NCBI RefSeq assembly: GCF_001194135.2
Contig: NC_068984.1
Coordinates: 123,101,818 to 123,165,817 of the forward strand
Reading direction: 5' to 3'
Origin: Octopus bimaculoides
Lineage: Eukaryota
Length of the DNA: 64,000 nucleotides
Every line of letters begins with the position of its first letter. Position 1 is the stretch's first letter. The notes under the pieces were generated by a model. It saw only the letters and a program-made list of their open reading frames with translations. It was not told where the DNA came from and did not search any database. A program made the position numbers and the translations under genes. Below are positions 5,399 through 25,338 of this stretch, one piece after another.

Positions 5399-6051
5399 CA
5401 GGCATGGCTCACATGGTTCTGGGTTCAGTCCTAATGTGTGACATGTTGAGCAAGTGTCTCCTACTATAGCCCTAGGCCAATCAAAATCTCGTCTGCTGAT
5501 TTGGTAGATAGATACTCTTTGAACCATTTTCTGAGGTTACATCATTCAGATAACTCACTCTTCAGTTGTTCTCAGACTATAACTACCTAAAAGTTGTATT
5601 ATATTATACTAAAACATATGTATGTATACGTACATGCATACATATGTGTCTGTATTAAATGTGTGTGTATGCATGCAATGAGCTTCTTTCTGAAGTTTCA
5701 GTCTTGGTCAATCAATTGCCAGTCACAAAGTATTTGTCAACCTGTAGCTGTAGATGAAAACCTTGCCCAAGTTACTGTGCAATGGGAAAATGTATGTATC
5801 ATATAAAGAGGGTGGCATTAGGAAGGGTATCCAGCCATAGAAACCATGCCAAAGCTGATACAAGAGATCAGTATAGACCTGAAGCTCGTTGGATCCTGTC
5901 AAATTGTCTAATCCATACCGTCATAGAAAAAAGGATGCTAAATGATGTTGATATGTAAATTATACTCACTCCCACAAATGGAATCAGTATTCTGTTGCTT
6001 AACCTTTCCTAAAAAAATAGGTTAACCAGTGGATTATGTTAGTCTTTAAAG

Positions 6052-9513: not shown

Positions 9514-9557
<44 letters not shown>

Positions 9558-11917: not shown

Positions 11918-12083
11918 TGTTGTGTCGACGCCCCCCAGGCGAAGAAGTAGGATCTCCCAAGACATATAAAAAGAGGTAGTCTGGCCGTGGTAGGTGTGTT
12001 GAGTAGCAGTCGAGTAGCAGTTGTGTAGCGGTTGAGCAGAGATCATCCGAAGGTGCTAGATAGCAGTAGCTTGAGACATAACA
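11918..12083. mobile_element. Solo LTR (166 bp), BEL/Pao- or Gypsy-like
   Basis: Termini TGTTGTGTC...GACATAACA; 5-bp direct repeat CAGAC at 11913-11917 and 12084-12088; internal TATA-like catataaaa near 11963. Confidence 0.7.
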
Positions 12084-13164: not shown

Positions 13165-16100
13165 TTAGTGCCTGCTGCCTCGAAGATGCAAGGTGGAGAG
13201 GAGGTTCCGCTAAGTTCCTGACAGGCAAAGAACACAGGTACAAGATTTTCTAGGCAAGGAACACAGACAGGGTTGGGGGCATTGATATACTTCTTGCGGA
13301 GAAATGGGTGGATAAGGTAATCGAAGTAGTCAAAGTATGCAATAGAATACTTAAGATTAGATTAGTGCTTCATCATGGGTTAGCAACCATTATCTTGGCC
13401 TATGCCCCTCAGCTGGGGCTACCCAATGGACAGAAAAACCGATTTTATGACACCCTCTAGCAGACTACCTTATTGACAGGGACCTTCTCTTTGTGGCTGG
13501 TGACTTCAATGGACATGTTGGACAACATACAGGGGGCTTCCATGGCGTACATGGAGGCTATGGTTTTGGTTCCTGCAATGAGGAGGGAACCAGTCTGCTG
13601 GAGTTCTGCAATGCAAATGATCTTATGGTTTGCAATACTACCTTCCGGAAACCTGCCAGACACTCTAGCCAAATTGACTACATCCTCGCCAGAAAAAGGG
13701 AAAGATGGCTGCTTATAAATGCCAAAACCTTCCCAGGCGAAGAATGTACCCCACAACATAGAGTGGTAGTTAGTGACTTCAGGATCAGGGCTAAGTGGAC
13801 GACCAGCATGGAGGAAAAAGGTCTGGAAGCTTAAAGATCCTGCGAATAGACAGATATTTAGAGACATACTAGCAGAAATACCCGGGTTAAAGAGAATAAT
13901 GAAATCTAAAAACGCTGTCTAGACTACGCAACCCTCAACTGTTAGTAGCTACGATACCATATTTCTACATTAATAACTCTCCAATCCATGCCAGCATGAA
14001 ACATAGACATTAAGTGGAATGCCAGTCTCTCATCTAGAAAGGCCTTGAAATCAATGTTACCAACTGGGGACTATGTGTGTTGCAGTGATAATAAAAAGAC
14101 TCAAAGGAGGTCTGCAGCGAAATAATTTTACTCAACACTTTGCAAGTGAATCAGTGGAGGCAAAGATGCGTCTCATTTACTTGACAATTTATGCACCACA
14201 TTGCAGAAATCACAATGTAAGTATATCTGAAAGGGTAGTNNNNNNNNNNNNNNNNNNNNNNNNNNNNNNNNNNNNNNNNNNNNNNNNNNNNNNNNNNNNN
14301 NNNNNNNNNNNNNNNNNNNNNNNNNNNNNNNNNNNNNNNNNNNNNNNNNNNNNNNNNNNNNNNNNNNNNNNNNNNNNNNNNNNNNNNNNNNNNNNNNNNN
14401 NNNNNNNNNNNNNNNNNNNNNNNNNNNNNNNNNNNNNNNNNNNNNNNNNNNNNNNNNNNNNNNNNNNNNNNNNNNNNNNNNNNNNNNNNNNNNNNNNNNN
14501 NNNNNNNNNNNNNNNNNNNNNNNNNNNNNNNNNNNNNNNNNNNNNNNNNNNNNNNNNNNNNNNNNNNNNNNNNNNNNNNNNNNNNNNNNNNNNNNNNNNN
14601 NNNNNNNNNNNNTGTCATTGTTTCAGTTAGTGGAATAACGTGTACATCTATATGTATACATATACATCTCTCTCTCTCTCTCTGAAAGTATCTGTCATTA
14701 CAGTATCGAAATGTGATTGTTTCAGTTAGTAGAATAGTTTCAATTTTAAAGTGAAAGTATTTGACACGAGTGTTTTTGTTTCACTTTTGACACATAATAC
14801 TTAAATAGTGGAGGAGATATTATGTTGCCGTGGGCTCGAACTCTGCAAGAAGTTAAAATATTTTTTTGACTAAAACACAAATGGAACCCTAAGTAAGGCA
14901 TCTGTAAAATTTGAATGAAATTGGCTGCGTAGTTCTCGAGTTTTAGGGATTCACACACACATTCTCATTTTTATATATATAGATTACTCGAAGCCTTTGA
15001 CGAAATAGGAGATATAGCTTCACACGATGTAGGAGACAGCTGGGGGTTTCTACGGGACAAGCTGCTGAGGGCCACTGACCAGATCTGTGGATGGCACAAA
15101 GTCCCCTCTCAACCCAAAATAACATGGTTGGGGAACAATGTGGTTGACAGGGCTATGAGAGAAAAGAAACAGATTTGGAAGGACTGGAAGAACGGCGGTA
15201 GAAGGGAATTGTATCAGACTGCCAGAAAGGAAGCTAGGAGACAGGTTTATTTAGCCAGAAGGGAAGCAGATAAGAAAAAATTTGTCAATGTTCTGCGCTG
15301 TGAGGTGTTTCATGTTGCAAGACTGTGAGAGAGAATCATGATGTAGTAGGAAAGAAATGTGTCCGCATGGTTGATCGTTCACTAAACGAGGCTGCAAAGA
15401 GAAGGGTTTGGAGATGCCACTATGAAAGGTTGCTCAATAAAGAAAATGAATGGGAGAAAGAGTCTGCCGAATGTCGACCCAACAGAGGGACCAGCTATCA
15501 GAGTTGACATTACCTTAGTAGATAAAGCAATCAAGAGGTATGAAGACAGGGAAAGCCCCCGGCCCATCAAGAATCACTGCAGAGATGCTCAAAATATCTG
15601 GCAGTGTCAGCTATAGCCTAGTTACCCGTATAGTTAACCAGGTGATACACGAAGGAGTCATACCCAATGACTAGTAGAGCAGCACCATAGTCAGCTGCTA
15701 CAAAGGTGAAGGTGACACTTTAGATACAAATAATTACAGAGGTATCAAGTTGTTGGATCAGGTAATGAAGGTCACAGCCCAACTAATTAGGGAGAGAGTC
15801 AGTTTAGATGCGGTGCAGTTTGGGTTTGTGCCAGGGAAAAACACCACTGATGATATATTTCTGGTAAGACAGATGCAGGAGAAATACCTAGCCAAAAATA
15901 AACCTGTTTACCTGGCTTTCATTGACATGGAGAAAGCCTTGACAGGGTCCCCAATCCCTTGAGGAAACTAGGGATAGATGAATGGTTAGTGAGAACTGTG
16001 CAAGCCATGTACAGGGACACTGTCAGTTAAGTGAGGGTTCGCAACAAGTACAGTGAAGAATTCCGGGTAGAGGTAGGGGGTCCACCAAGGTTCAGTCCTC

Positions 16101-18024: not shown

Positions 18025-18177
18025 TTACTGCCTCTCCTCTGGCTTATTGAAGACATATGTTAGATAGCATTTGCCGCAATAATGCCTATCAAAGTGTGAG
18101 GCCATAAACACACCAGCTCCACATTCCTCATTGGGACACTCACGACGCAGACGAGTGATTTTACCATTTTCATCAAC
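18025..18177 (-). CDS. RPS27A: RPS27A last exon: [50 protein letters not shown]
   Basis: Hand-translated S27a zinc-finger half; acceptor tttgttgcag; TAA at 18025-18027. Absent from the ORF track. Confidence 0.97.
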
Positions 18178-18597
18178 CTGCAACAAACAAAAACAATCCA
18201 TCATTTGAACATTGTAGTGAAACTGGTGAAAAATACAAAAAGAAAAAAAAAAAAATTAGAACTATTTAGTACAAATCAGAGGCATTCAATTATGACAAAT
18301 CTCTTGAACAATTTCAACAATTATTCCAGAATATGCCGTTATACAGCATGTAGGGTCTACACTCACAGAAAAAAGACAAATGTGAATTCTTGCAGTTGGT
18401 CATCAATTTACATCAACTTTCCATTCCAGACAGGCTGTAGAATAAGTTGATTCTCAGAGTTCTATGACTGCATGCCCTTTCTGACACCAATCATTTTGCA
18501 GCAAATACCAAGTCTCCATTTTATTGTCACCAGCACTAGCATACACAAAAGGCCTAATTAATTTCACTGAAAAGTCAACTCCAAATGTAAGTAGATG

Positions 18598-18642
<45 letters not shown>

Positions 18643-18678
18643 ACAATTGCTTGCAAGTTTCAATAAATACAGCTAAAT

Positions 18679-18753
18679 TGTCTGTGGATCAGAAACCATA
18701 AGTTTTAATCATTAATCAGGTGAAACACGGAAGAACATCATTTCCAACAGACA
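18679..18753 (-). ncRNA. C/D box snoRNA, SNORD126-like, copy 1
   Basis: Terminal stem tgtctgt/acagaca; box C AUGAUGU, D' CUGA, C' AUGAUUA, D CUGA; D' guide UCCGUGUUUCA complementary to conserved 28S UGAAACACGGA. Confidence 0.88.
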
Positions 18754-18869
18754 CTTGGTATCATGAATAGTTTAATACATTAACAGCCTTGGCCTGCTAC
18801 TGGAACTCACCAGCAACACCACTTACTTTCAGTCACACTGCATACTGTTTAATTAAAAGGAAATGTAAA

Positions 18870-19623
18870 CTTTTTTGAATTTTTACAATATTTCACAAGT
18901 AAACTTTTCCCTGTATAACAACTAAATCCACTGCAGCACCCAACTTCAAATTTTCCAAACTTTGATCCATTTTGTGGGCTTTCCTGGCATATACTGTTTG
19001 TTTACATTCTGCGGAAGTTTGCTTCCACAGTGATCGCTTCAAACAAGCATACTGAAAAAAAAAAATAATAAAATCTAACGGTTTCGCATCCTAAGAAAGA
19101 CTATGGATAGACCCCCACCTCCTCAGAAAAATTGCTAATAAAAACCTTTTAAAGTTTTTACTTCATTCCGATGTAATATCGTCTTTGCTGTTGCTATCGC
19201 CACTTTCAGTTTCTTCAGAATCACTGCTTTCGGTTTGAAATACAGAAATATCCTATTCATTCTCATACACCACATGCTTTTGTACCGCACTCATTCTTTT
19301 TCTCGATATCTCCATATTTTCCGTTGAAAAACCTTTAAATTCGGAATCACTGCCTGATAGCATGAAACTCCTATCCATTTTCAAAGTTGGAAAAAAAAAA
19401 AAAAAAAAAAAAAATCACCTAAAATCCACCGAATTCAGATATCACGTCAAGCAATGTCGGATACTTATAACTCAACTAGTTACAAAGTGAAATCACGTAT
19501 TTTCACAAATATACAAACAAGATTTGTGCTTAAATTCACATTTAAATAACAATGGGTACTCTCGGCTGGCTTGGTCTTATGAACAAAAAAATTTTCCTGC
19601 CAGGTTAGTATCGAAAGGGTTAA
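18870..19623 (-). mobile_element. Internally deleted piggyBac transposon fossil in the RPS27A last intron
   Basis: TTAA-CCCTTTCG terminus at 19623; acidic N-terminal SDSEFKGF (19325-19363); KQYMPGKPTKW-IKVW at 18955-18999. Second TIR not found, so the lower boundary is approximate. Confidence 0.75.
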
Positions 19624-19643
19624 AATATCAGTTATTCAAATAT

Positions 19644-19719
19644 GTCTGTGGATCAGAAACCATAAATATTAATCATTATTCAGGTGAAACACGGAAAAGA
19701 AACATCATTTCCAACAGAC
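19644..19719 (-). ncRNA. C/D box snoRNA, SNORD126-like, copy 2
   Basis: Same boxes, stem gtctgt/acagac and both guides conserved with copy 1, while the linkers differ. Confidence 0.88.
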
Positions 19720-20149
19720 TTCATAGCTACAATTTTCCATCCAGGCCAACATTAGCCTATTGATCAGATGGTTAACCCTATAATAGATGTATCCAGCTTC
19801 TAACAATCATCAGAATTAGCCACACACAAAAAACAAAAAAACCTGCACATGGTGATTGTGGAAGCAACCATTCAAATGAGAAAAAGTTTACACTATTGAG
19901 AATAAGTTTTCTAAAAAAATTACCAAACAAAAAGGGAAGCTGTTACTTAGGTTATATAACCTACCATGAAAAATCAATTGAGATATTTAAGATGAAAAAA
20001 ATTCTAACTACAGTTGCTCTAACTGATCTGATCAAATAGTGGTACTGTAGGTCTGAGCATCATTGTAGCCAGTTAAAATATTTTCAATTAACAGCCATTT
20101 ATCTATAAGTTTTGTTTACTTTTTAAAATAAATGAAGCAAGTTGTGTAT

Positions 20150-20206
20150 GTATTAGAAACCATTAATCAAGTGAAACACTGGAAACATCTAACAGCATCC
20201 TGGGAT
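20150..20206 (-). pseudogene. Decayed third copy of the SNORD126-like snoRNA
   Basis: ttagaaaccattaatcaagtgaaacactggaaacatctaacag: D (CUAA) and D' (UUGA) mutated, guide disrupted, spacer deleted. Confidence 0.7.
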
Positions 20207-21305
20207 TATTGGCAACTACATTTGCCCAAATTAACCTCCTGCCTATTGCAAACTTCAAATATAAACAGCCAAAGTCTTAAGATCTGAAGTATTGAATATT
20301 TACTTCCCATAAGCACTTGGTTCTTAGCTTCTAATTTTGGATTTTACCTTGTGAATAAAACATAAGAACTATAACCAGTGAATCAATGTTTAATTACACT
20401 AGACCTGCATATTCTATAGCAAAATTGGAACTCTTCAAACTCTGCATACCACAAATTGCTAATTGTAAAAGGTTCAATAAATCTAGATTGCAACTAAACG
20501 TGAAAGGTACAAAGAACATGGCTGGGAGATAGATTACAAGGAGACATCTTTCAGTGGGGCAGCCTGTCAATTGATGTGGTAACCACTATTTATTAGATAT
20601 AATACATTGAGTACTTTCATTATCACGAGAGAAACTTTTTTAAATTCACCATGAAAATTAGCTGGCACCAGTCATGAAGAATATAACATTTCCTTAGAAA
20701 ATACAGAGGTTTAATAAAGGATTTGATGCAAAGAATTAAATGTAGCATAATTATTCACTTTGGCAAACCCAGAACAGCCACAGCCAGATGGGAAAGTTAA
20801 AATGACAATTGTAAAATGCTTTCTGATTGGGCTATACAAGAAACGTTCAAGGCAAATATTTAATAAATGTTATTACAACATCAATAGCCCCCAAAAGACA
20901 GCTCACGGGGATAATAAAATGCAATTATTTGCAAAAATTTTAATCAATATTCTGGTGAAGCACCTATCGTCTTAAAGGTTAAGGGATACTAATACAAAAC
21001 ATACCCAGAAGAAGACTTAGGTACAACCCACCTTTGGTTCCATTTAACTAAATTCTAGACTGTTCTGAATGCCTGCTTTCCATGCTGGCATGGGTTGGAC
21101 AGTTTGACATGGAGCTGTCCAGACACCACCTGCCTGATGTAGCATCGTTTCTACAAGTGGACACCCTTTCAAACACCTCTAATTTGGAGGTTTTTCTAGC
21201 AAAGATCACTACTGCAACCATTCAGATAGGACTTGTTTTTCGCCAGAAACATATTTGAAGAGATAACATTCAAGTTAGTCAAAGTTATATATGAACAATT
21301 TGCTA

Positions 21306-21644
<339 letters not shown>

Positions 21645-21659
21645 TCATTAAATACTTAC

Positions 21660-21714
21660 CCTCCTTATCTTGAATTTTTGCCTTGACATTTTCGATAGTA
21701 TCACTGGGTTCGAC
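21660..21714 (-). CDS. RPS27A: RPS27A exon (55 nt): VEPSDTIENVKAKIQDKEG
   Basis: Ubiquitin residues 17-35; acceptor ttatag, donor G|gtaagt. Confidence 0.98.
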
Positions 21715-22472: not shown

Positions 22473-22520
22473 CTCAAGTGTGATGGTCTTGCCAGTAAGG
22501 GTTTTTACGAAGATCTGCAT
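22473..22520 (-). CDS. RPS27A: RPS27A first coding exon (48 coding nt): MQIFVKTLTGKTITLE; exon begins at 22532
   Basis: Ubiquitin N-terminus; acceptor ttttgcag, donor GAG|gtaagt. Spliced CDS 48+55+218+153 = 474 nt, 157 aa. Confidence 0.98.
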
Positions 22521-23154: not shown

Positions 23155-23224
23155 ATTGCTCAGAACATTTAACTTAATACAAATCACAGATTTCAGAAGT
23201 GTCCCAAGTGGTCATCACAGCAAT
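23155..23224 (-). ncRNA. C/D box snoRNA, U58/SNORD58-like, in RPS27A intron 1
   Basis: attgc/gcaat stem; C GUGAUGA, D' CUGA, C' GUGAUU, D CUGA; D' guide CUUGGGACACUU pairs over 12 nt (two G-U) with conserved 28S AGGUGUCCUAAG. Confidence 0.88.
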
Positions 23225-25338
23225 AATTTCCTACATTTATTTTTTTTTATACACAAATATTACCTGTACTGCAGATAGTCCTAAATACTTATTTCTATGT
23301 TCAAAGCTAAATGAACTGGGCTACTGCTGGTATTGTGCCACCACCACAAACATTTCTATTCAATTTCTCCTGCTCTTCATAAGAATTGGTAAGAGAACAA
23401 ATACAGCACTTCCACTAAACTCAGGTTCTTTTGAAATCAAAATGTGTGTATACATTCTCACCCATCCGTTTCATGGTCTTCCATTTGTCACCTTTAAAGA
23501 GGAACCTAATCTACACTTAAACTATTAAAATGTTAAATCGATTGTTCAATAGCTCGAGTTCACTTAAGGGTCGCATATTTCTAGGAAGAATGAGATGGAG
23601 GAACTTCTTGCAGTATATCCAGGAAATATTGCACTCCATTTTCCAGCACTAAGCATCAACGATGGCTATTAATTACCAGAAAAGTTAAAGCTAAAATAAC
23701 CAAATGGCTGCATCAGTGTAACATGATAGAAAATCAGTGATCCGAATATATAACTTAATTAAAATCAAATTTCAAGTCCTCCCCCCCAGTTGGGACACAT
23801 GAAATTCCTATACATTTTAATGGTAGAGATGGACTATATGTAATCTGAACCTTTCCACCCCCTTATTTATTAATTTTTTTTACGGAATCCCACGTTTTAG
23901 GCTATGGAGATTCCGATTCTGAAGAAAAAAATCTCAAAAACTAAAACTAAACCTACGACACCTTTATATCTAAGTGGTGCCCACCAAAGTACGTAAAGAA
24001 AAAAAAAAAAAAAAAAAAAAACAACTCCGTATTAAACTAGACTACCCAGTTGTCTCTAATATTAATAGAAGAGTCTGGCTAATTTGAAACCACTTACAAT
24101 ACTAGTGGCATAAGCGTTTGGGGATAATTCTTTTAGTACTATTTGTACGCAAGATATTTATCACTATTCGACAGAAAATTCTTGCAGAGAGGCGCCACAT
24201 CCCGCTTTATCACACTTCCCCGTAAAAAAATTTCAGATTTCCTATTGCAATTTTCGGAGAAAAAACTCGAATTTTTGATTTTCTCCCAACCCCCTTATGT
24301 TTTAAATTTACCATTTTCGAAATTTATTTTGGTGGCACCACAGTTGAAACTATGGAAATTATGATTCTAAAAATAATCAAAATTTCAAAAACTATAACTT
24401 TCCACTTGCAATTTGTGAGAGGAAAAAGACAAAGAATGTCAGAAAGTTTCTCATATTACTAAGAAATTTTAGTGGCAACATGCAACGGCCAAGTAACAAT
24501 TTACGTAATTTCGGAAACGTTGTTTAAACTCGTACTCATTATATGGCATGGTCTATATTCTATTTAAATCGTGAAAAAGACAAACTTATAACTTACGAAA
24601 GTTTCGTTATATTGTTCCTTATACAGTCCCGTAAACTAACACAAGTATGATGTGTAAAAATATAACGTGAATAGAAAAATTAAATAAATGTGCAGCTGGA
24701 AGTGAGATTTTAATAGCACATGGTATGAGATGATTTCTCAGCTGCGACAGCAATAACACATATGAAGCATGATATTACGACTGATATAATCCAACTTAAA
24801 GACGCTCCAACCAAGACAATCTTGTCTCGAGGAAAATTTGACCTGTTTCTTCCATTAAGATTTTTTTTAATGTTCAATCTGGGGCAACTTCGCCTTTATT
24901 CATACAAAATATTTCTAGGACTTAAATTACCCAATGCGTCCTTACTTCTCAGATGGGACATGATAGAAATTTGGGCAGTAGTCTAATTAATGATAAACTT
25001 CTTATACAGTAATGTATAATCATTTCGTAACTAAGTCATAATCCTAGAATCAAAAATATAAAATAACCTACATGCTTTCTATTTACAATTAAAATATATA
25101 AATTTAAAATGACTAACCGAATCTCACGCACATAGACTCCATGCTTGAGAAGAAATTACTCCACGTGAAGAAAGTCAATCATCTAACGGACTGGCTGGCG
25201 AATGATATGGGGTATTATTTACATTATAAGATACATAACTAAGTCGACAACAGAATAAATCAACAAACAGATATAAAATTAACATTATATACAATATTAA
25301 ACAAGCATTTAGAACAATTTTAGTCGGAGAAAGCTTAC

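What the first reader, a model, noticed from the sequence alone, without database searches (positions are those of the whole stretch)
18679..20206. Three tandem SNORD126-like C/D snoRNA copies in one RPS27A intron (two intact, one decayed)
Seen: two copies conserve the boxes, terminal stem and both guides while linkers and flanks diverge, which suggests selection; a third copy has broken D and D' boxes. The D' guide matches conserved 28S UGAAACACGGA. By the +5 rule it targets the middle A of GAAAC, equivalent to human 28S A1323 (old 1310). From memory, human SNORD126 (hosted in CCNB1IP1) has the same UCCGUGUUUCA-N-CUGA guide. Inference: an invertebrate homologue in a different host gene. Several snoRNAs per intron depart from the vertebrate one-per-intron norm, so an extra processing step is implied.
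Basis: partly seen in the sequence, partly recalled or inferred. Interest (0 to 1): 0.72.

Follow-up and report, generated by a model that had tools for sequence, protein, structure and literature searches.

The report
Octopus rRNA-methylation guide RNAs in RPS27A
The last intron of the Octopus bimaculoides ribosomal-protein gene RPS27A holds two intact copies and one decayed copy of an ordinary box C/D small nucleolar RNA, predicted to guide a 28S rRNA ribose methylation already known in humans and flies; it is a real and apparently undescribed gene, but of a familiar kind.

Summary
The window is Octopus bimaculoides. RPS27A lies on the minus strand, and its last intron (21359..18178) carries two intact box C/D snoRNAs (18679-18753 and 19644-19719) and one decayed copy (about 20142-20206), all sense to the host.

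The D' guide UCCGUGUUUCA-C-CUGA has the same register as the Rfam SNORD126 consensus. By the fifth-nucleotide rule it targets the middle A of 28S GAAAC, which is human Am1323 and Drosophila Am796.

The RNA is conserved in O. sinensis (same intron, three to four box-intact copies plus the same relic) and in Sepia pharaonis (one copy, same host gene, different intron). The terminal stem covaries. The D' guide is invariant, except in one recombinant O. sinensis copy.

The second (D) guide is not conserved between species, so only one guide looks functional. Rfam thresholds are not reached (23 bits against 55). However, metagenomic eukaryote snoRNAs with the same guide score against both the SNORD126 model and an octopus-only model. 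They sit in several different host genes.

Several snoRNAs in one intron, and changes of host gene, are already known in other organisms. Expression and methylation were not testable here.

Verdict: a new member of a known kind, of modest interest.

The parts
18679..18753 (-). Copy 1, an intact box C/D snoRNA of about 75 nt. Its 3' end is 500 nt upstream of the 3' splice site.
   Evidence: Sequence read. MFE fold shows a 7+3 bp terminal stem. Octopus-only model R1 scores 98 bits. Rfam SNORD126 scores 23 bits, E=0.23. It is 73/75 identical to the O. sinensis orthologue, against 85% in the 3' flank.
18735..18741 (-). Copy 1, C box AUGAUGU
   Evidence: Read from the sequence. Invariant in all box-intact cephalopod copies.
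18721..18731 (-). Copy 1, D' antisense element UCCGUGUUUCA. It is complementary to 28S 5'-UGAAACACGGA-3'.
   Evidence: Exact pattern match. Same element and same register as the Rfam SNORD126 consensus.
18716..18719 (-). Copy 1, D' box CUGA. It is separated from the antisense element by one nucleotide (C).
18706..18711 (-). Copy 1, C' box UGAUUA
   Evidence: Read from the sequence. The same variant C' box is found in Sepia, the Rfam SNORD126 consensus and the metagenomic relatives.
18689..18692 (-). Copy 1, D box CUGA. It is preceded by a non-conserved 13-nt region (AAACUUAUGGUUU).
19644..19719 (-). Copy 2, an intact box C/D snoRNA. C box 19702-19708; D' guide 19685-19695; D' box 19680-19683; C' box 19670-19675; D box 19653-19656. 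It lies about 1.46 kb upstream of the 3' splice site.
   Evidence: R1 scores 109 bits.
20142..20206 (-). Copy 3, a decayed copy (snoRNA pseudogene). The C, D' and D boxes and the stem are broken and there is an internal deletion.
   Evidence: Alignments. R1 scores 21.6 bits, E=0.037. The orthologous relic in O. sinensis is also decayed.
18178..21359 (-). Last intron of RPS27A (GT...AG, 3182 nt), which hosts all three copies
   Evidence: Splice sites read. tblastn exon map.
18025..18177 (-). RPS27A last coding exon (VDENGK...EERQ, stop TAA at 18027-18025)
21360..21577 (-). RPS27A coding exon 3 (ubiquitin C-terminal part plus the S27a N-terminal part)
21660..21714 (-). RPS27A coding exon 2
22473..22520 (-). 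RPS27A coding exon 1 (ATG at 22520)

Best explanation
Copies 1 and 2 are functional, intron-encoded box C/D snoRNAs of the cephalopod lineage.

Proposed mechanism:
1. They are co-transcribed with the RPS27A pre-mRNA.
2. The core snoRNP proteins, including fibrillarin, assemble on the C/D and C'/D' motifs.
3. The RNAs are released from the excised intron and trimmed to about 75 nt.
4. The D' antisense element (UCCGUGUUUCA, one spacer nucleotide, then CUGA) forms an 11-bp duplex with 28S 5'-UGAAACACGGA-3'.
5. This directs 2'-O-methylation of the middle A of GAAAC. That is the site equivalent to human 28S-Am1323 (guided by SNORD126) and Drosophila 28S-Am796 (guided by snoRNA:CD43).

The region upstream of the D box is not a conserved guide. 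Copy 3 is a dead duplicate. The array evolves by birth and death inside the intron.

Two snoRNPs sit 0.5 and 1.5 kb from the 3' splice site, about 890 nt apart. Releasing both probably needs splicing-independent assembly, which the long terminal stems would help, and a cut in the spacer.

Shown here: the sequence anatomy, its conservation, the covariation and the guide register. Inferred: expression, processing route and methylation.
For: - Anatomy. Canonical boxes and a 9-10 bp terminal stem in both copies.
- Strand and host. Both copies are sense to RPS27A.
- Paralogues. The snoRNA bodies are 90% identical, while their flanks are at the random level. The neighbouring copy 3 shows what decay looks like.
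- Orthologues. O. sinensis copy 1 is 73/75 identical, against 85% in the flank.
- Sepia pharaonis. One copy in RPS27A has identical C, D', C' and D boxes and an identical D' guide. Its stem sequence is different but still pairs. It was found by a model built from Octopus copies only, at 39 bits and E=6e-6.
- Terminal stem across 14 family members. 97% of cells are paired and 7 of 9 pairs show changes on both sides. None of 500 shuffles reached the observed value on four of the five measures (3 of 500 on pair types). Slid controls paired only 21-49%.
- Guide register. It is identical to the Rfam SNORD126 consensus.
- Target site in other species. SNORD126 is assigned to 28S-Am1323/Am1310. That site was detected by mass spectrometry. 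In Drosophila, Gm789/Am796/Am799/Cm813 have the same spacing as human Gm1316/Am1323/Am1326/Cm1340. Am796 is listed there as conserved in human, Xenopus and Dictyostelium. The human Gm1316 and Cm1340 positions are recalled from memory, not read here.
- Distribution. At least 12 metagenomic eukaryote loci carry complete C/D snoRNAs with the same guide and register.
Against: - No expression, processing or methylation data could be consulted.
That the target segment is conserved in octopus rests on general knowledge of eukaryotic LSU rRNA.
- No Rfam family reaches its gathering score.
- The C box ends in U rather than A.
- Both copies lie far from the roughly 70-80 nt distance to the 3' splice site that I recall (not checked here) as optimal for mammalian intronic C/D snoRNAs.
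- The identity of the two paralogues could be kept partly by gene conversion rather than by separate selection on each.
Confidence: 0.85

Rival explanations
1. The cephalopod RNA does the same job as SNORD126 but is not descended from the same ancestral gene. It could have arisen independently, for example from a U18/SNORD18-type guide by a 3-nt shift of the D' box, or by retargeting of another C/D snoRNA. This rival concerns ancestry only and is compatible with the functional explanation.
For: The Rfam SNORD126 score is only 23 bits for copy 1 and 20.8 for Sepia, against a gathering score of 55. SNORD18 scores about the same, 19.8-21.3 bits. Most of the similarity lies in the boxes and the guide, which function alone would constrain. 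The host genes differ: CCNB1IP1 in human, RPS27A in cephalopods, and others elsewhere. The U18 guide GGUCCGUGUUU-CUGA differs from the octopus guide by a 3-nt register.
Against: The non-canonical C' box UGAUUA is shared by Octopus, Sepia, the mammalian consensus and most metagenomic relatives. Five metagenomic snoRNAs score against both the mammalian SNORD126 model (30-37 bits, E 2.5e-4 to 0.016) and the octopus-only model (26-34 bits, E 1e-4 to 5e-3), which links the two ends. The target site is listed as methylated in human, Xenopus, Drosophila and Dictyostelium, which fits an old guide.
Confidence: 0.3
2. The copies are inert snoRNA-like relics, such as retroposed or duplicated pseudogenes, that are not matured into stable snoRNPs.
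For: There are no expression data. The array clearly produces dead copies: copy 3, and a possible fourth relic at 20928-20963. The position in the intron is far from what I recall as the mammalian optimum.
Against: Boxes, stem and D' guide are intact in both copies, in the O. sinensis orthologues and in Sepia. Over the same time the neighbouring copy 3 and all flanks have decayed. Compensatory changes keep the stem paired.
Confidence: 0.06
3. It is the cephalopod U18/SNORD18 orthologue and directs methylation of the A in CAC (human Am1326, yeast A649), not of the GAAAC A.
For: It has the same rRNA segment and the same UCCGUGUUUC core. There are weak SNORD18 hits of 19.8-21.3 bits. In Drosophila, snoRNA:CD43 is listed for both Am796 and Am799.
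Against: In every cephalopod copy with this guide the only D' box CUGA lies 3 nt further downstream (UUUCAC-CUGA) than in U18 (UUU-CUGA). The fifth nucleotide upstream therefore pairs with the middle A of GAAAC. This register is invariant in Octopus and Sepia and across the 12 metagenomic relatives.
Confidence: 0.03

Closest known systems
Human/mammalian SNORD126 (Rfam RF01168), guide for 28S-Am1323 (old Am1310)
   Same: It is a box C/D snoRNA of about 75-77 nt. It has the same D' antisense element UCCGUGUUUCA, one spacer nucleotide and CUGA, so the same predicted target nucleotide. It has the same variant C' box UGAUUA and no recognised second guide.
   Different: The host gene differs (CCNB1IP1 against RPS27A). 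The spacer between the C box and the guide is shorter in octopus. The C box ends in U, and the stem sequence differs. The score is well below the family threshold (23 against 55 bits). Octopus has two to four tandem copies in one intron.
Drosophila snoRNA:CD43, assigned to 28S-Am796 (and Am799)
   Same: It is an invertebrate C/D guide for the same conserved 28S position. I inferred this from the Gm789/Am796/Am799/Cm813 spacing matching the human sites.
   Different: Its sequence and host gene were not available here, so no direct comparison was made. It is also listed for the neighbouring U18 site, which the octopus guide register does not reach.
SNORD18 / U18 / yeast snR18 (Rfam RF00093)
   Same: It pairs with the same 28S segment and shares the core UCCGUGUUU.
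   Different: Its D' box lies 3 nt closer to the guide, so it targets the A of CAC (human Am1326). In vertebrates it is hosted in RPL4 (from my own knowledge, not checked here).
Intronic snoRNA gene clusters of Drosophila, and polycistronic snoRNA precursors of plants and yeast
   Same: More than one snoRNA is released from one intron or precursor, which requires separation of the units. The Drosophila clusters are known to me here from reference titles seen. The yeast co-hosted snoRNAs processed by RNase III are known from the abstract listed.
   Different: The octopus units are paralogues of a single guide, about 0.9 kb apart in a 3.2-kb intron of a ribosomal-protein gene. No processing signal was identified.

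Membership tests
Box C/D snoRNA (class) | C box (RUGAUGA) near the 5' end and D box (CUGA) near the 3' end | tested here: met
   AUGAUGU and CUGA are present in copies 1 and 2 and in all box-intact O. sinensis and Sepia copies. The last C-box position is U.
Box C/D snoRNA (class) | A terminal stem that brings C and D together and is maintained in evolution | tested here: met
   A 9-10 bp stem in Octopus and about 12-13 bp in Sepia. 97% of cells are paired and 7 of 9 pairs have changes on both sides; none of 500 shuffles reached the observed pairing or covariation. The alignment was fitted to the model, which favours pairing.
Box C/D snoRNA (class) | Internal D' and C' boxes | tested here: met
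   D' is CUGA and C' is UGAUUA, 4 nt apart in Octopus and 9 nt in Sepia.
Box C/D snoRNA (class) | An antisense element of at least 10 nt to rRNA or snRNA that ends next to D or D' | tested here: inconclusive
   There is an 11-nt perfect complement to 5'-UGAAACACGGA-3', the segment targeted by the Rfam SNORD126 and SNORD18 consensus guides. The octopus 28S sequence itself could not be fetched.
Box C/D snoRNA (class) | A stable RNA of about 60-100 nt bound by fibrillarin, NOP56, NOP58 and SNU13 | not testable with these tools
   No RNA-seq or protein-binding data are reachable with these tools.
SNORD126 (Rfam RF01168) | Covariance-model score at or above the curated gathering score (55 bits) | tested here: not met
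   No hit at gathering score. Copy 1 scores 23.0 bits (E=0.23). Copy 2 is not listed for this family. Sepia scores 20.8 bits.
SNORD126 (Rfam RF01168) | D' guide UCCGUGUUUCA-N-CUGA, which places the 28S-Am1323 adenosine at the fifth position | tested here: met
   The element and register are identical in the consensus and in the octopus and Sepia copies. The assignment of SNORD126 to Am1323 comes from PMC9941101.
SNORD126 (Rfam RF01168) | Similarity outside the guide and canonical boxes that would indicate common descent | tested here: inconclusive
   The variant C' box UGAUUA is shared. Five metagenomic snoRNAs are hit by both the SNORD126 model (30-37 bits) and the octopus-only model (26-34 bits). 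No direct significant match between octopus and mammals was found.
SNORD126 (Rfam RF01168) | Host gene CCNB1IP1 (a feature of the mammalian gene, not a strict criterion) | tested here: not met
   The host is RPS27A in Octopus and Sepia. Hosts also differ among the metagenomic relatives.
SNORD18 / U18 (Rfam RF00093) | Gathering score (41 bits), and a D' box directly after UUU so that the CAC adenosine is targeted | tested here: not met
   Scores are 19.8-21.3 bits. The octopus D' box is 3 nt further downstream.

The most novel reading that the evidence does not exclude
The tandem array may be a working example of guide-RNA birth, death and retargeting inside one intron. Unequal crossing-over at the snoRNA bodies changes copy number between Octopus species: two box-intact copies in O. 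bimaculoides and four in O. sinensis. It may also generate new specificities. One O. sinensis copy is a recombinant with about 99% identical flanks whose D' guide was rewritten at 5-6 positions, and the D-side regions differ completely between species. Copy number might then tune a methylation site that is sub-stoichiometric and variable in humans, which would link intron architecture to ribosome heterogeneity in cephalopods.
Probability: 0.1. Interest if true: 0.5.

Novelty: new member of a known kind. Interest (0 to 1): 0.3.

Why it matters
It adds an apparently unannotated cephalopod guide RNA for a 28S ribose methylation that is listed as shared by human, Xenopus, Drosophila and Dictyostelium. 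It shows that RPS27A has been its host gene since before octopuses and cuttlefish diverged.

It is also a clean small case for three points:
- how snoRNA copies are born, kept and lost inside an intron;
- how Rfam gathering thresholds miss real invertebrate snoRNAs;
- how a guide keeps its target while its host gene and host intron change.

It makes a specific, cheap prediction for any rRNA-modification map of a cephalopod. It does not change what is known about how snoRNAs work.

Tried and rejected
- Rfam at gathering score over the whole window gave nothing.
- The first protein search with full-length RPS27A was swamped by polyubiquitins. The search with the S27a part alone returned only truncated proteins and no cephalopod. 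The route that worked was an exact-sequence cluster look-up followed by contig look-ups.
- The look-up of cluster member P0250 returned a compact non-animal genome and was useless.
- The 3-mismatch pattern hit at 15638-15653 lies outside the gene, with no evident box C/D features around it, and was set aside as a likely chance match.
- The snR13-like hit at 20720-20824 (E=0.16) has neither UGAUGA nor CUGA at the box positions and was rejected.
- The mir-297, mir-466 and mir-1277 hits at 18585-18655 are a (TA)n/(TG)n microsatellite.
- A retroposition origin for copy 2 was considered. No A-tail is seen in the 30 nt downstream of either copy, and no target-site duplication was evident on inspection (not searched systematically). 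Old signs would have decayed.
- Literature searches found nothing for the Drosophila names I recalled (Me28S-A982 etc.). Huang et al. 2005 is not held. The Drosophila paper has no held supplements.
- A search for the 28S D3A primer sequence in cephalopod papers did not surface a usable citation.
- I did not find a convincing rRNA target for the D-side regions. This was checked only against rRNA stretches recalled from memory, so it is not evidence.
- The Physella acuta RPS27A locus has no such snoRNA.
Full report
WHAT IS THERE. The window is Octopus bimaculoides: 6.5 kb around the finding is 100% identical to GCA_001194135.2 chromosome CM046604.1. Its coding exons are 22520-22473, 21714-21660, 21577-21360 and 18177-18025. 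The spliced 157-aa product is exactly the protein annotated as ubiquitin-40S ribosomal protein S27a in O. bimaculoides, O. vulgaris and a third accession. The last intron, 21359..18178 (3182 nt, GT...AG), contains all three copies, and all are on the minus strand, sense to the host.

THE COPIES. Read on the minus strand, copy 1 (18753..18679) is:
UGUCUGU-U-GGA A AUGAUGU UCU UCCGUGUUUCA C CUGA UUAA UGAUUA AAACUUAUGGUUU CUGA UCC-ACAGACA.

In order, this is a terminal stem, the C box, the antisense element, one spacer nucleotide, the D' box, the C' box, a 13-nt region, the D box and the other arm of the terminal stem.

Copy 2 (19719..19644) has the same parts. It differs only in:
- a 3-nt indel and one change in the spacer after the C box,
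- one change in the D'-C' linker,
- two changes in the 5' part of the D-side region.

The MFE folds give a 7+3 bp (copy 1) or 6+3 bp (copy 2) terminal stem with a one-nucleotide bulge.

Copy 3 (about 20206..20142) aligns to both, but:
- the C box is reduced to AGAUG,
- the D' box reads UUGA,
- the D box reads CUAA,
- about 12-18 nt are deleted,
- the 3' stem arm is mutated.

MORE THAN CHANCE. The two intact copies match each other at E about 3e-22, and nothing else in the 64 kb comes close. The bodies are 70/78 identical, while 300-nt flanks on either side are 35-38% identical. That is the level of unrelated intron pieces, 32 +/- 7%.

COMPARATIVE EVIDENCE. An exact-sequence look-up of the host protein gave the RPS27A loci of O. 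sinensis (L001), O. bimaculoides (L002) and Sepia pharaonis (L003).

O. sinensis. It has an orthologue of copy 1 in the same intron. This is 73/75 identical, with both changes in the D-side region, against 85% identity in the 3' flank. It also has three copy-2-type units and the orthologue of copy 3, equally decayed. Copy 3 therefore died before the two Octopus species split, and it serves as an internal neutral control.

Sepia pharaonis. It has a single copy in RPS27A, but in the first coding intron (L003 6322-6405), about 105 nt upstream of the 3' splice site. Its C box, D' guide with spacer C, D' box, C' box and D box are identical to those of Octopus. The linkers and the D-side region are different. 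The terminal stem has a different sequence that still pairs.

Model search. A covariance model built from the six Octopus copies alone finds the Sepia copy at 39 bits, E=6e-6. It finds copy 3 at 21.6 bits and nothing in the RPS27A locus of the gastropod Physella acuta.

Stem covariation. On an alignment of 14 family members, the nine stem pairs are 97% paired and seven have changes on both sides. None of 500 shuffles reached the observed pairing, double-change counts or covariation score (3 of 500 for the count of pair types). The slid controls paired only 21-49%. This alignment was fitted to the model, so the pairing percentage is flattered.

THE SECOND GUIDE. The D-side region reads:
- O. 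bimaculoides, both copies: ..UUAUGGUUU
- O. sinensis copy 1: ..UUAGGGUUU
- O. sinensis copy-2 units: ..CGAUCACUUU
- Sepia: ..UUUUAUUUUUC

I conclude that only the D' guide is under long-term constraint. The shared 9-mer in O. bimaculoides may reflect a short conversion tract or simply shared ancestry.

TARGET AND KNOWN RELATIVES. The Rfam SNORD126 consensus is cgucUGCCAUGAUGAAAUGCAUGUUaAGUCCGUGUUUCAGCUGAUcACCCUGAUUAaACACAUGCuCUGAGCAgacg. It has the same antisense element, the same one-nucleotide spacer before CUGA, and the same variant C' box UGAUUA as the cephalopod RNAs.

The SNORD18 consensus (..GGUCCGUGUUUCUGA) uses the same rRNA segment with the D' box 3 nt closer to the guide.

Applying the fifth-nucleotide rule to the octopus guide (positions upstream of D': C, A, C, U, U) puts the methyl group on the middle A of 5'-UGAAACACGGA-3'. 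That is three nucleotides 5' of the U18 site.

The literature assigns SNORD126 to 28S-Am1323 (old Am1310) (PMC9941101). It gives the host as CCNB1IP1 (PMC1636440). It records Am1310 as a site found by mass spectrometry (PMC8393311).

In the Drosophila RiboMeth-seq map, 28S Gm789, Am796, Am799 and Cm813 are spaced +7, +3 and +14. This is exactly the spacing of human Gm1316, Am1323, Am1326 and Cm1340. The human Gm1316 and Cm1340 positions are recalled from memory, so the equivalence is my inference from the spacing. On that reading, Am796, guided by snoRNA:CD43 and marked as conserved in human, Xenopus and Dictyostelium, is the same site (PMC11014333). The modification is therefore old, and an invertebrate guide for it is already on record.

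FAMILY MEMBERSHIP. No Rfam family reaches its gathering score anywhere in the window. With permissive thresholds, SNORD126 is the best C/D family for copy 1 (23 bits, E=0.23). SNORD18 and SNORD111 score about 20-22 bits for the copies. Sepia gives 20.8 bits for SNORD126. By Rfam's criterion the RNA is not a member.

Most of the 120 lack box C/D features and are probably chance matches in unrelated DNA. Twelve have a complete C/D architecture around the guide. Five of these have the stem GACUGC/GCAGUC, the C' box UGAUUA, and neighbouring matches, just below gathering score, to H/ACA snoRNA families. They score 30-37 bits against SNORD126 (E 2.5e-4 to 0.016) and 26-34 bits against the octopus-only model (E 1e-4 to 5e-3). 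They bridge the two ends. This, together with the shared odd C' box, makes common descent more likely than not in my judgement, but it is not proven.

Hosts differ freely. None of the twelve loci is in RPS27A. Neighbouring same-strand exons match an RRM protein that looks like PABP, an RSE1/DDB1/CPSF1 beta-propeller that looks like SF3B3, a CFAP96-like protein and, weakly, L28e.

HOW IT MOST LIKELY WORKS. Shown here:
- the motif set, the covarying stem and the invariant 11-nt guide with its register;
- the sense orientation in a highly expressed ribosomal-protein gene;
- retention of two copies while a third copy and all flanks decayed.

Inferred:
- co-transcription with RPS27A and assembly of the fibrillarin snoRNP;
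- release from the intron;
- methylation of the GAAAC adenosine.

The copies end 500 nt and about 1.46 kb from the 3' splice site. The Sepia copy sits at about 105 nt, and a Sepia SNORD58-like snoRNA at about 73 nt. From my own knowledge of work by Hirose and Steitz, not checked here, mammalian C/D snoRNAs far from the branch point rely on extended terminal stems and splicing-independent assembly. The 9-13 bp stems seen here fit that picture.

With two snoRNPs in one lariat, exonucleases entering from the ends would leave a di-snoRNA with an 890-nt spacer. The arrangement itself is not new. Intronic snoRNA clusters are described in Drosophila (reference titles), and co-hosted snoRNAs processed by RNase III are described in yeast (abstract).

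NOVELTY AND VERDICT. I found no paper in the held library that maps snoRNA guides or rRNA 2'-O-methylation in a cephalopod. The giant-squid genome paper reports only counts of Rfam-homologous loci. Since no Rfam family reaches threshold here, these genes are probably unannotated.

They are nevertheless an ordinary member of a well-understood class, with a target already known in flies and humans. The modestly interesting points are:
- the conserved host (RPS27A) across coleoids, with a change of intron;
- the birth-and-death dynamics of the array;
- the demonstration that this guide family is widespread and hops between host genes.

I rate it as a new member of a known kind, with interest about 0.3. 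I put confidence at about 0.85 that copies 1 and 2 are functional guides for the Am1323-equivalent site.

Noticed in passing
window 23155-23223 (-): A second, unrelated box C/D snoRNA in the same host gene. It is SNORD58-like (36 bits against a gathering score of 42, E=3.2e-5; guide CUUGGGACAC). It lies upstream of the ATG exon, in what must be the 5'UTR intron; the acceptor is at about 22533. A TOP-like first exon may lie near 24412-24440, but that is my guess. Sepia RPS27A has SNORD58-like copies at L003 9306-9373 and 6835-6901, and a weak one at 5680-5745, one per intron. RPS27A is thus a multi-family snoRNA host in coleoids.
   Followed up: partly
L001 10869-10946 (O. sinensis): One copy-2-type unit has an upstream flank nearly identical to that of the unit at 11954 and a downstream flank nearly identical to that of the unit at 9555. 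This is as expected for an unequal crossing-over product. Yet its D' guide is rewritten at 5-6 of 12 positions (CCUAUCGUCCAC) and its D-side region carries a 3-nt deletion, while all boxes stay intact. The cause could be a mutation cluster at the junction, conversion from an unseen paralogue, or a new guide. It is not resolved.
   Followed up: partly
window 20928-20963 (-): A possible fourth, very decayed relic in the same intron. It reads CUUCACCAGAAUAUUGAUUAAAAUU, against UUUCACCUGAAUAAUGAUUAAUAUU in copy 2. BLAST gives 88% over 25 nt (E=0.05) and model R1 gives 14 bits (E=1.7). It is not significant on its own.
   Followed up: no
window 18586-18644, and L003 6421-6476: A (TA)n/(TG)n microsatellite lies about 40 nt downstream of octopus copy 1 and about 15 nt downstream of the Sepia copy. 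In both it is preceded by CUUGCAA. It produces spurious miRNA-family hits (mir-297, mir-466, mir-1277). Whether the shared arrangement is residual flank homology, meaning the unit moved between introns as DNA, or coincidence is open.
   Followed up: no
window about 19140-19416: Between copies 1 and 2 there is a repeat-like insert with a 26-nt A run on the + strand (19391-19416). On the minus strand it has a short acidic ORF-like stretch (MDRSFMLSGSDSEF...). The same piece recurs beside the copy-2 units in O. sinensis. It is probably a transposable-element fragment that inflates the spacing in the array.
   Followed up: no
L068, L084, L085, L087, L114 (metagenome contigs): Unidentified eukaryote contigs carry a SNORD126-type snoRNA. 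L068, L084, L085 and L087 also have matches, all below gathering score, to H/ACA families (snoR639/H1, SNORA57; SNORA70 in L084) and, in L084, to SNORD57. If real, these would be multi-snoRNA host genes. The four contigs translated also share a repeated element containing a CUGAUGAG motif, which may be a hammerhead-bearing repeat (my impression from the translations, not tested).
   Followed up: partly
L018, L020, L024 (metagenome contigs): A subgroup of same-guide snoRNAs also has a conserved D-side element, AGUCUUCUUUCCCUGU-CUGA. It is complementary to a GGGAAAGAAGAC stretch that I recall from 28S rRNA. These would be true double guides, unlike the cephalopod RNA. The neighbouring exon in L020 is CFAP96-like.
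   Followed up: no
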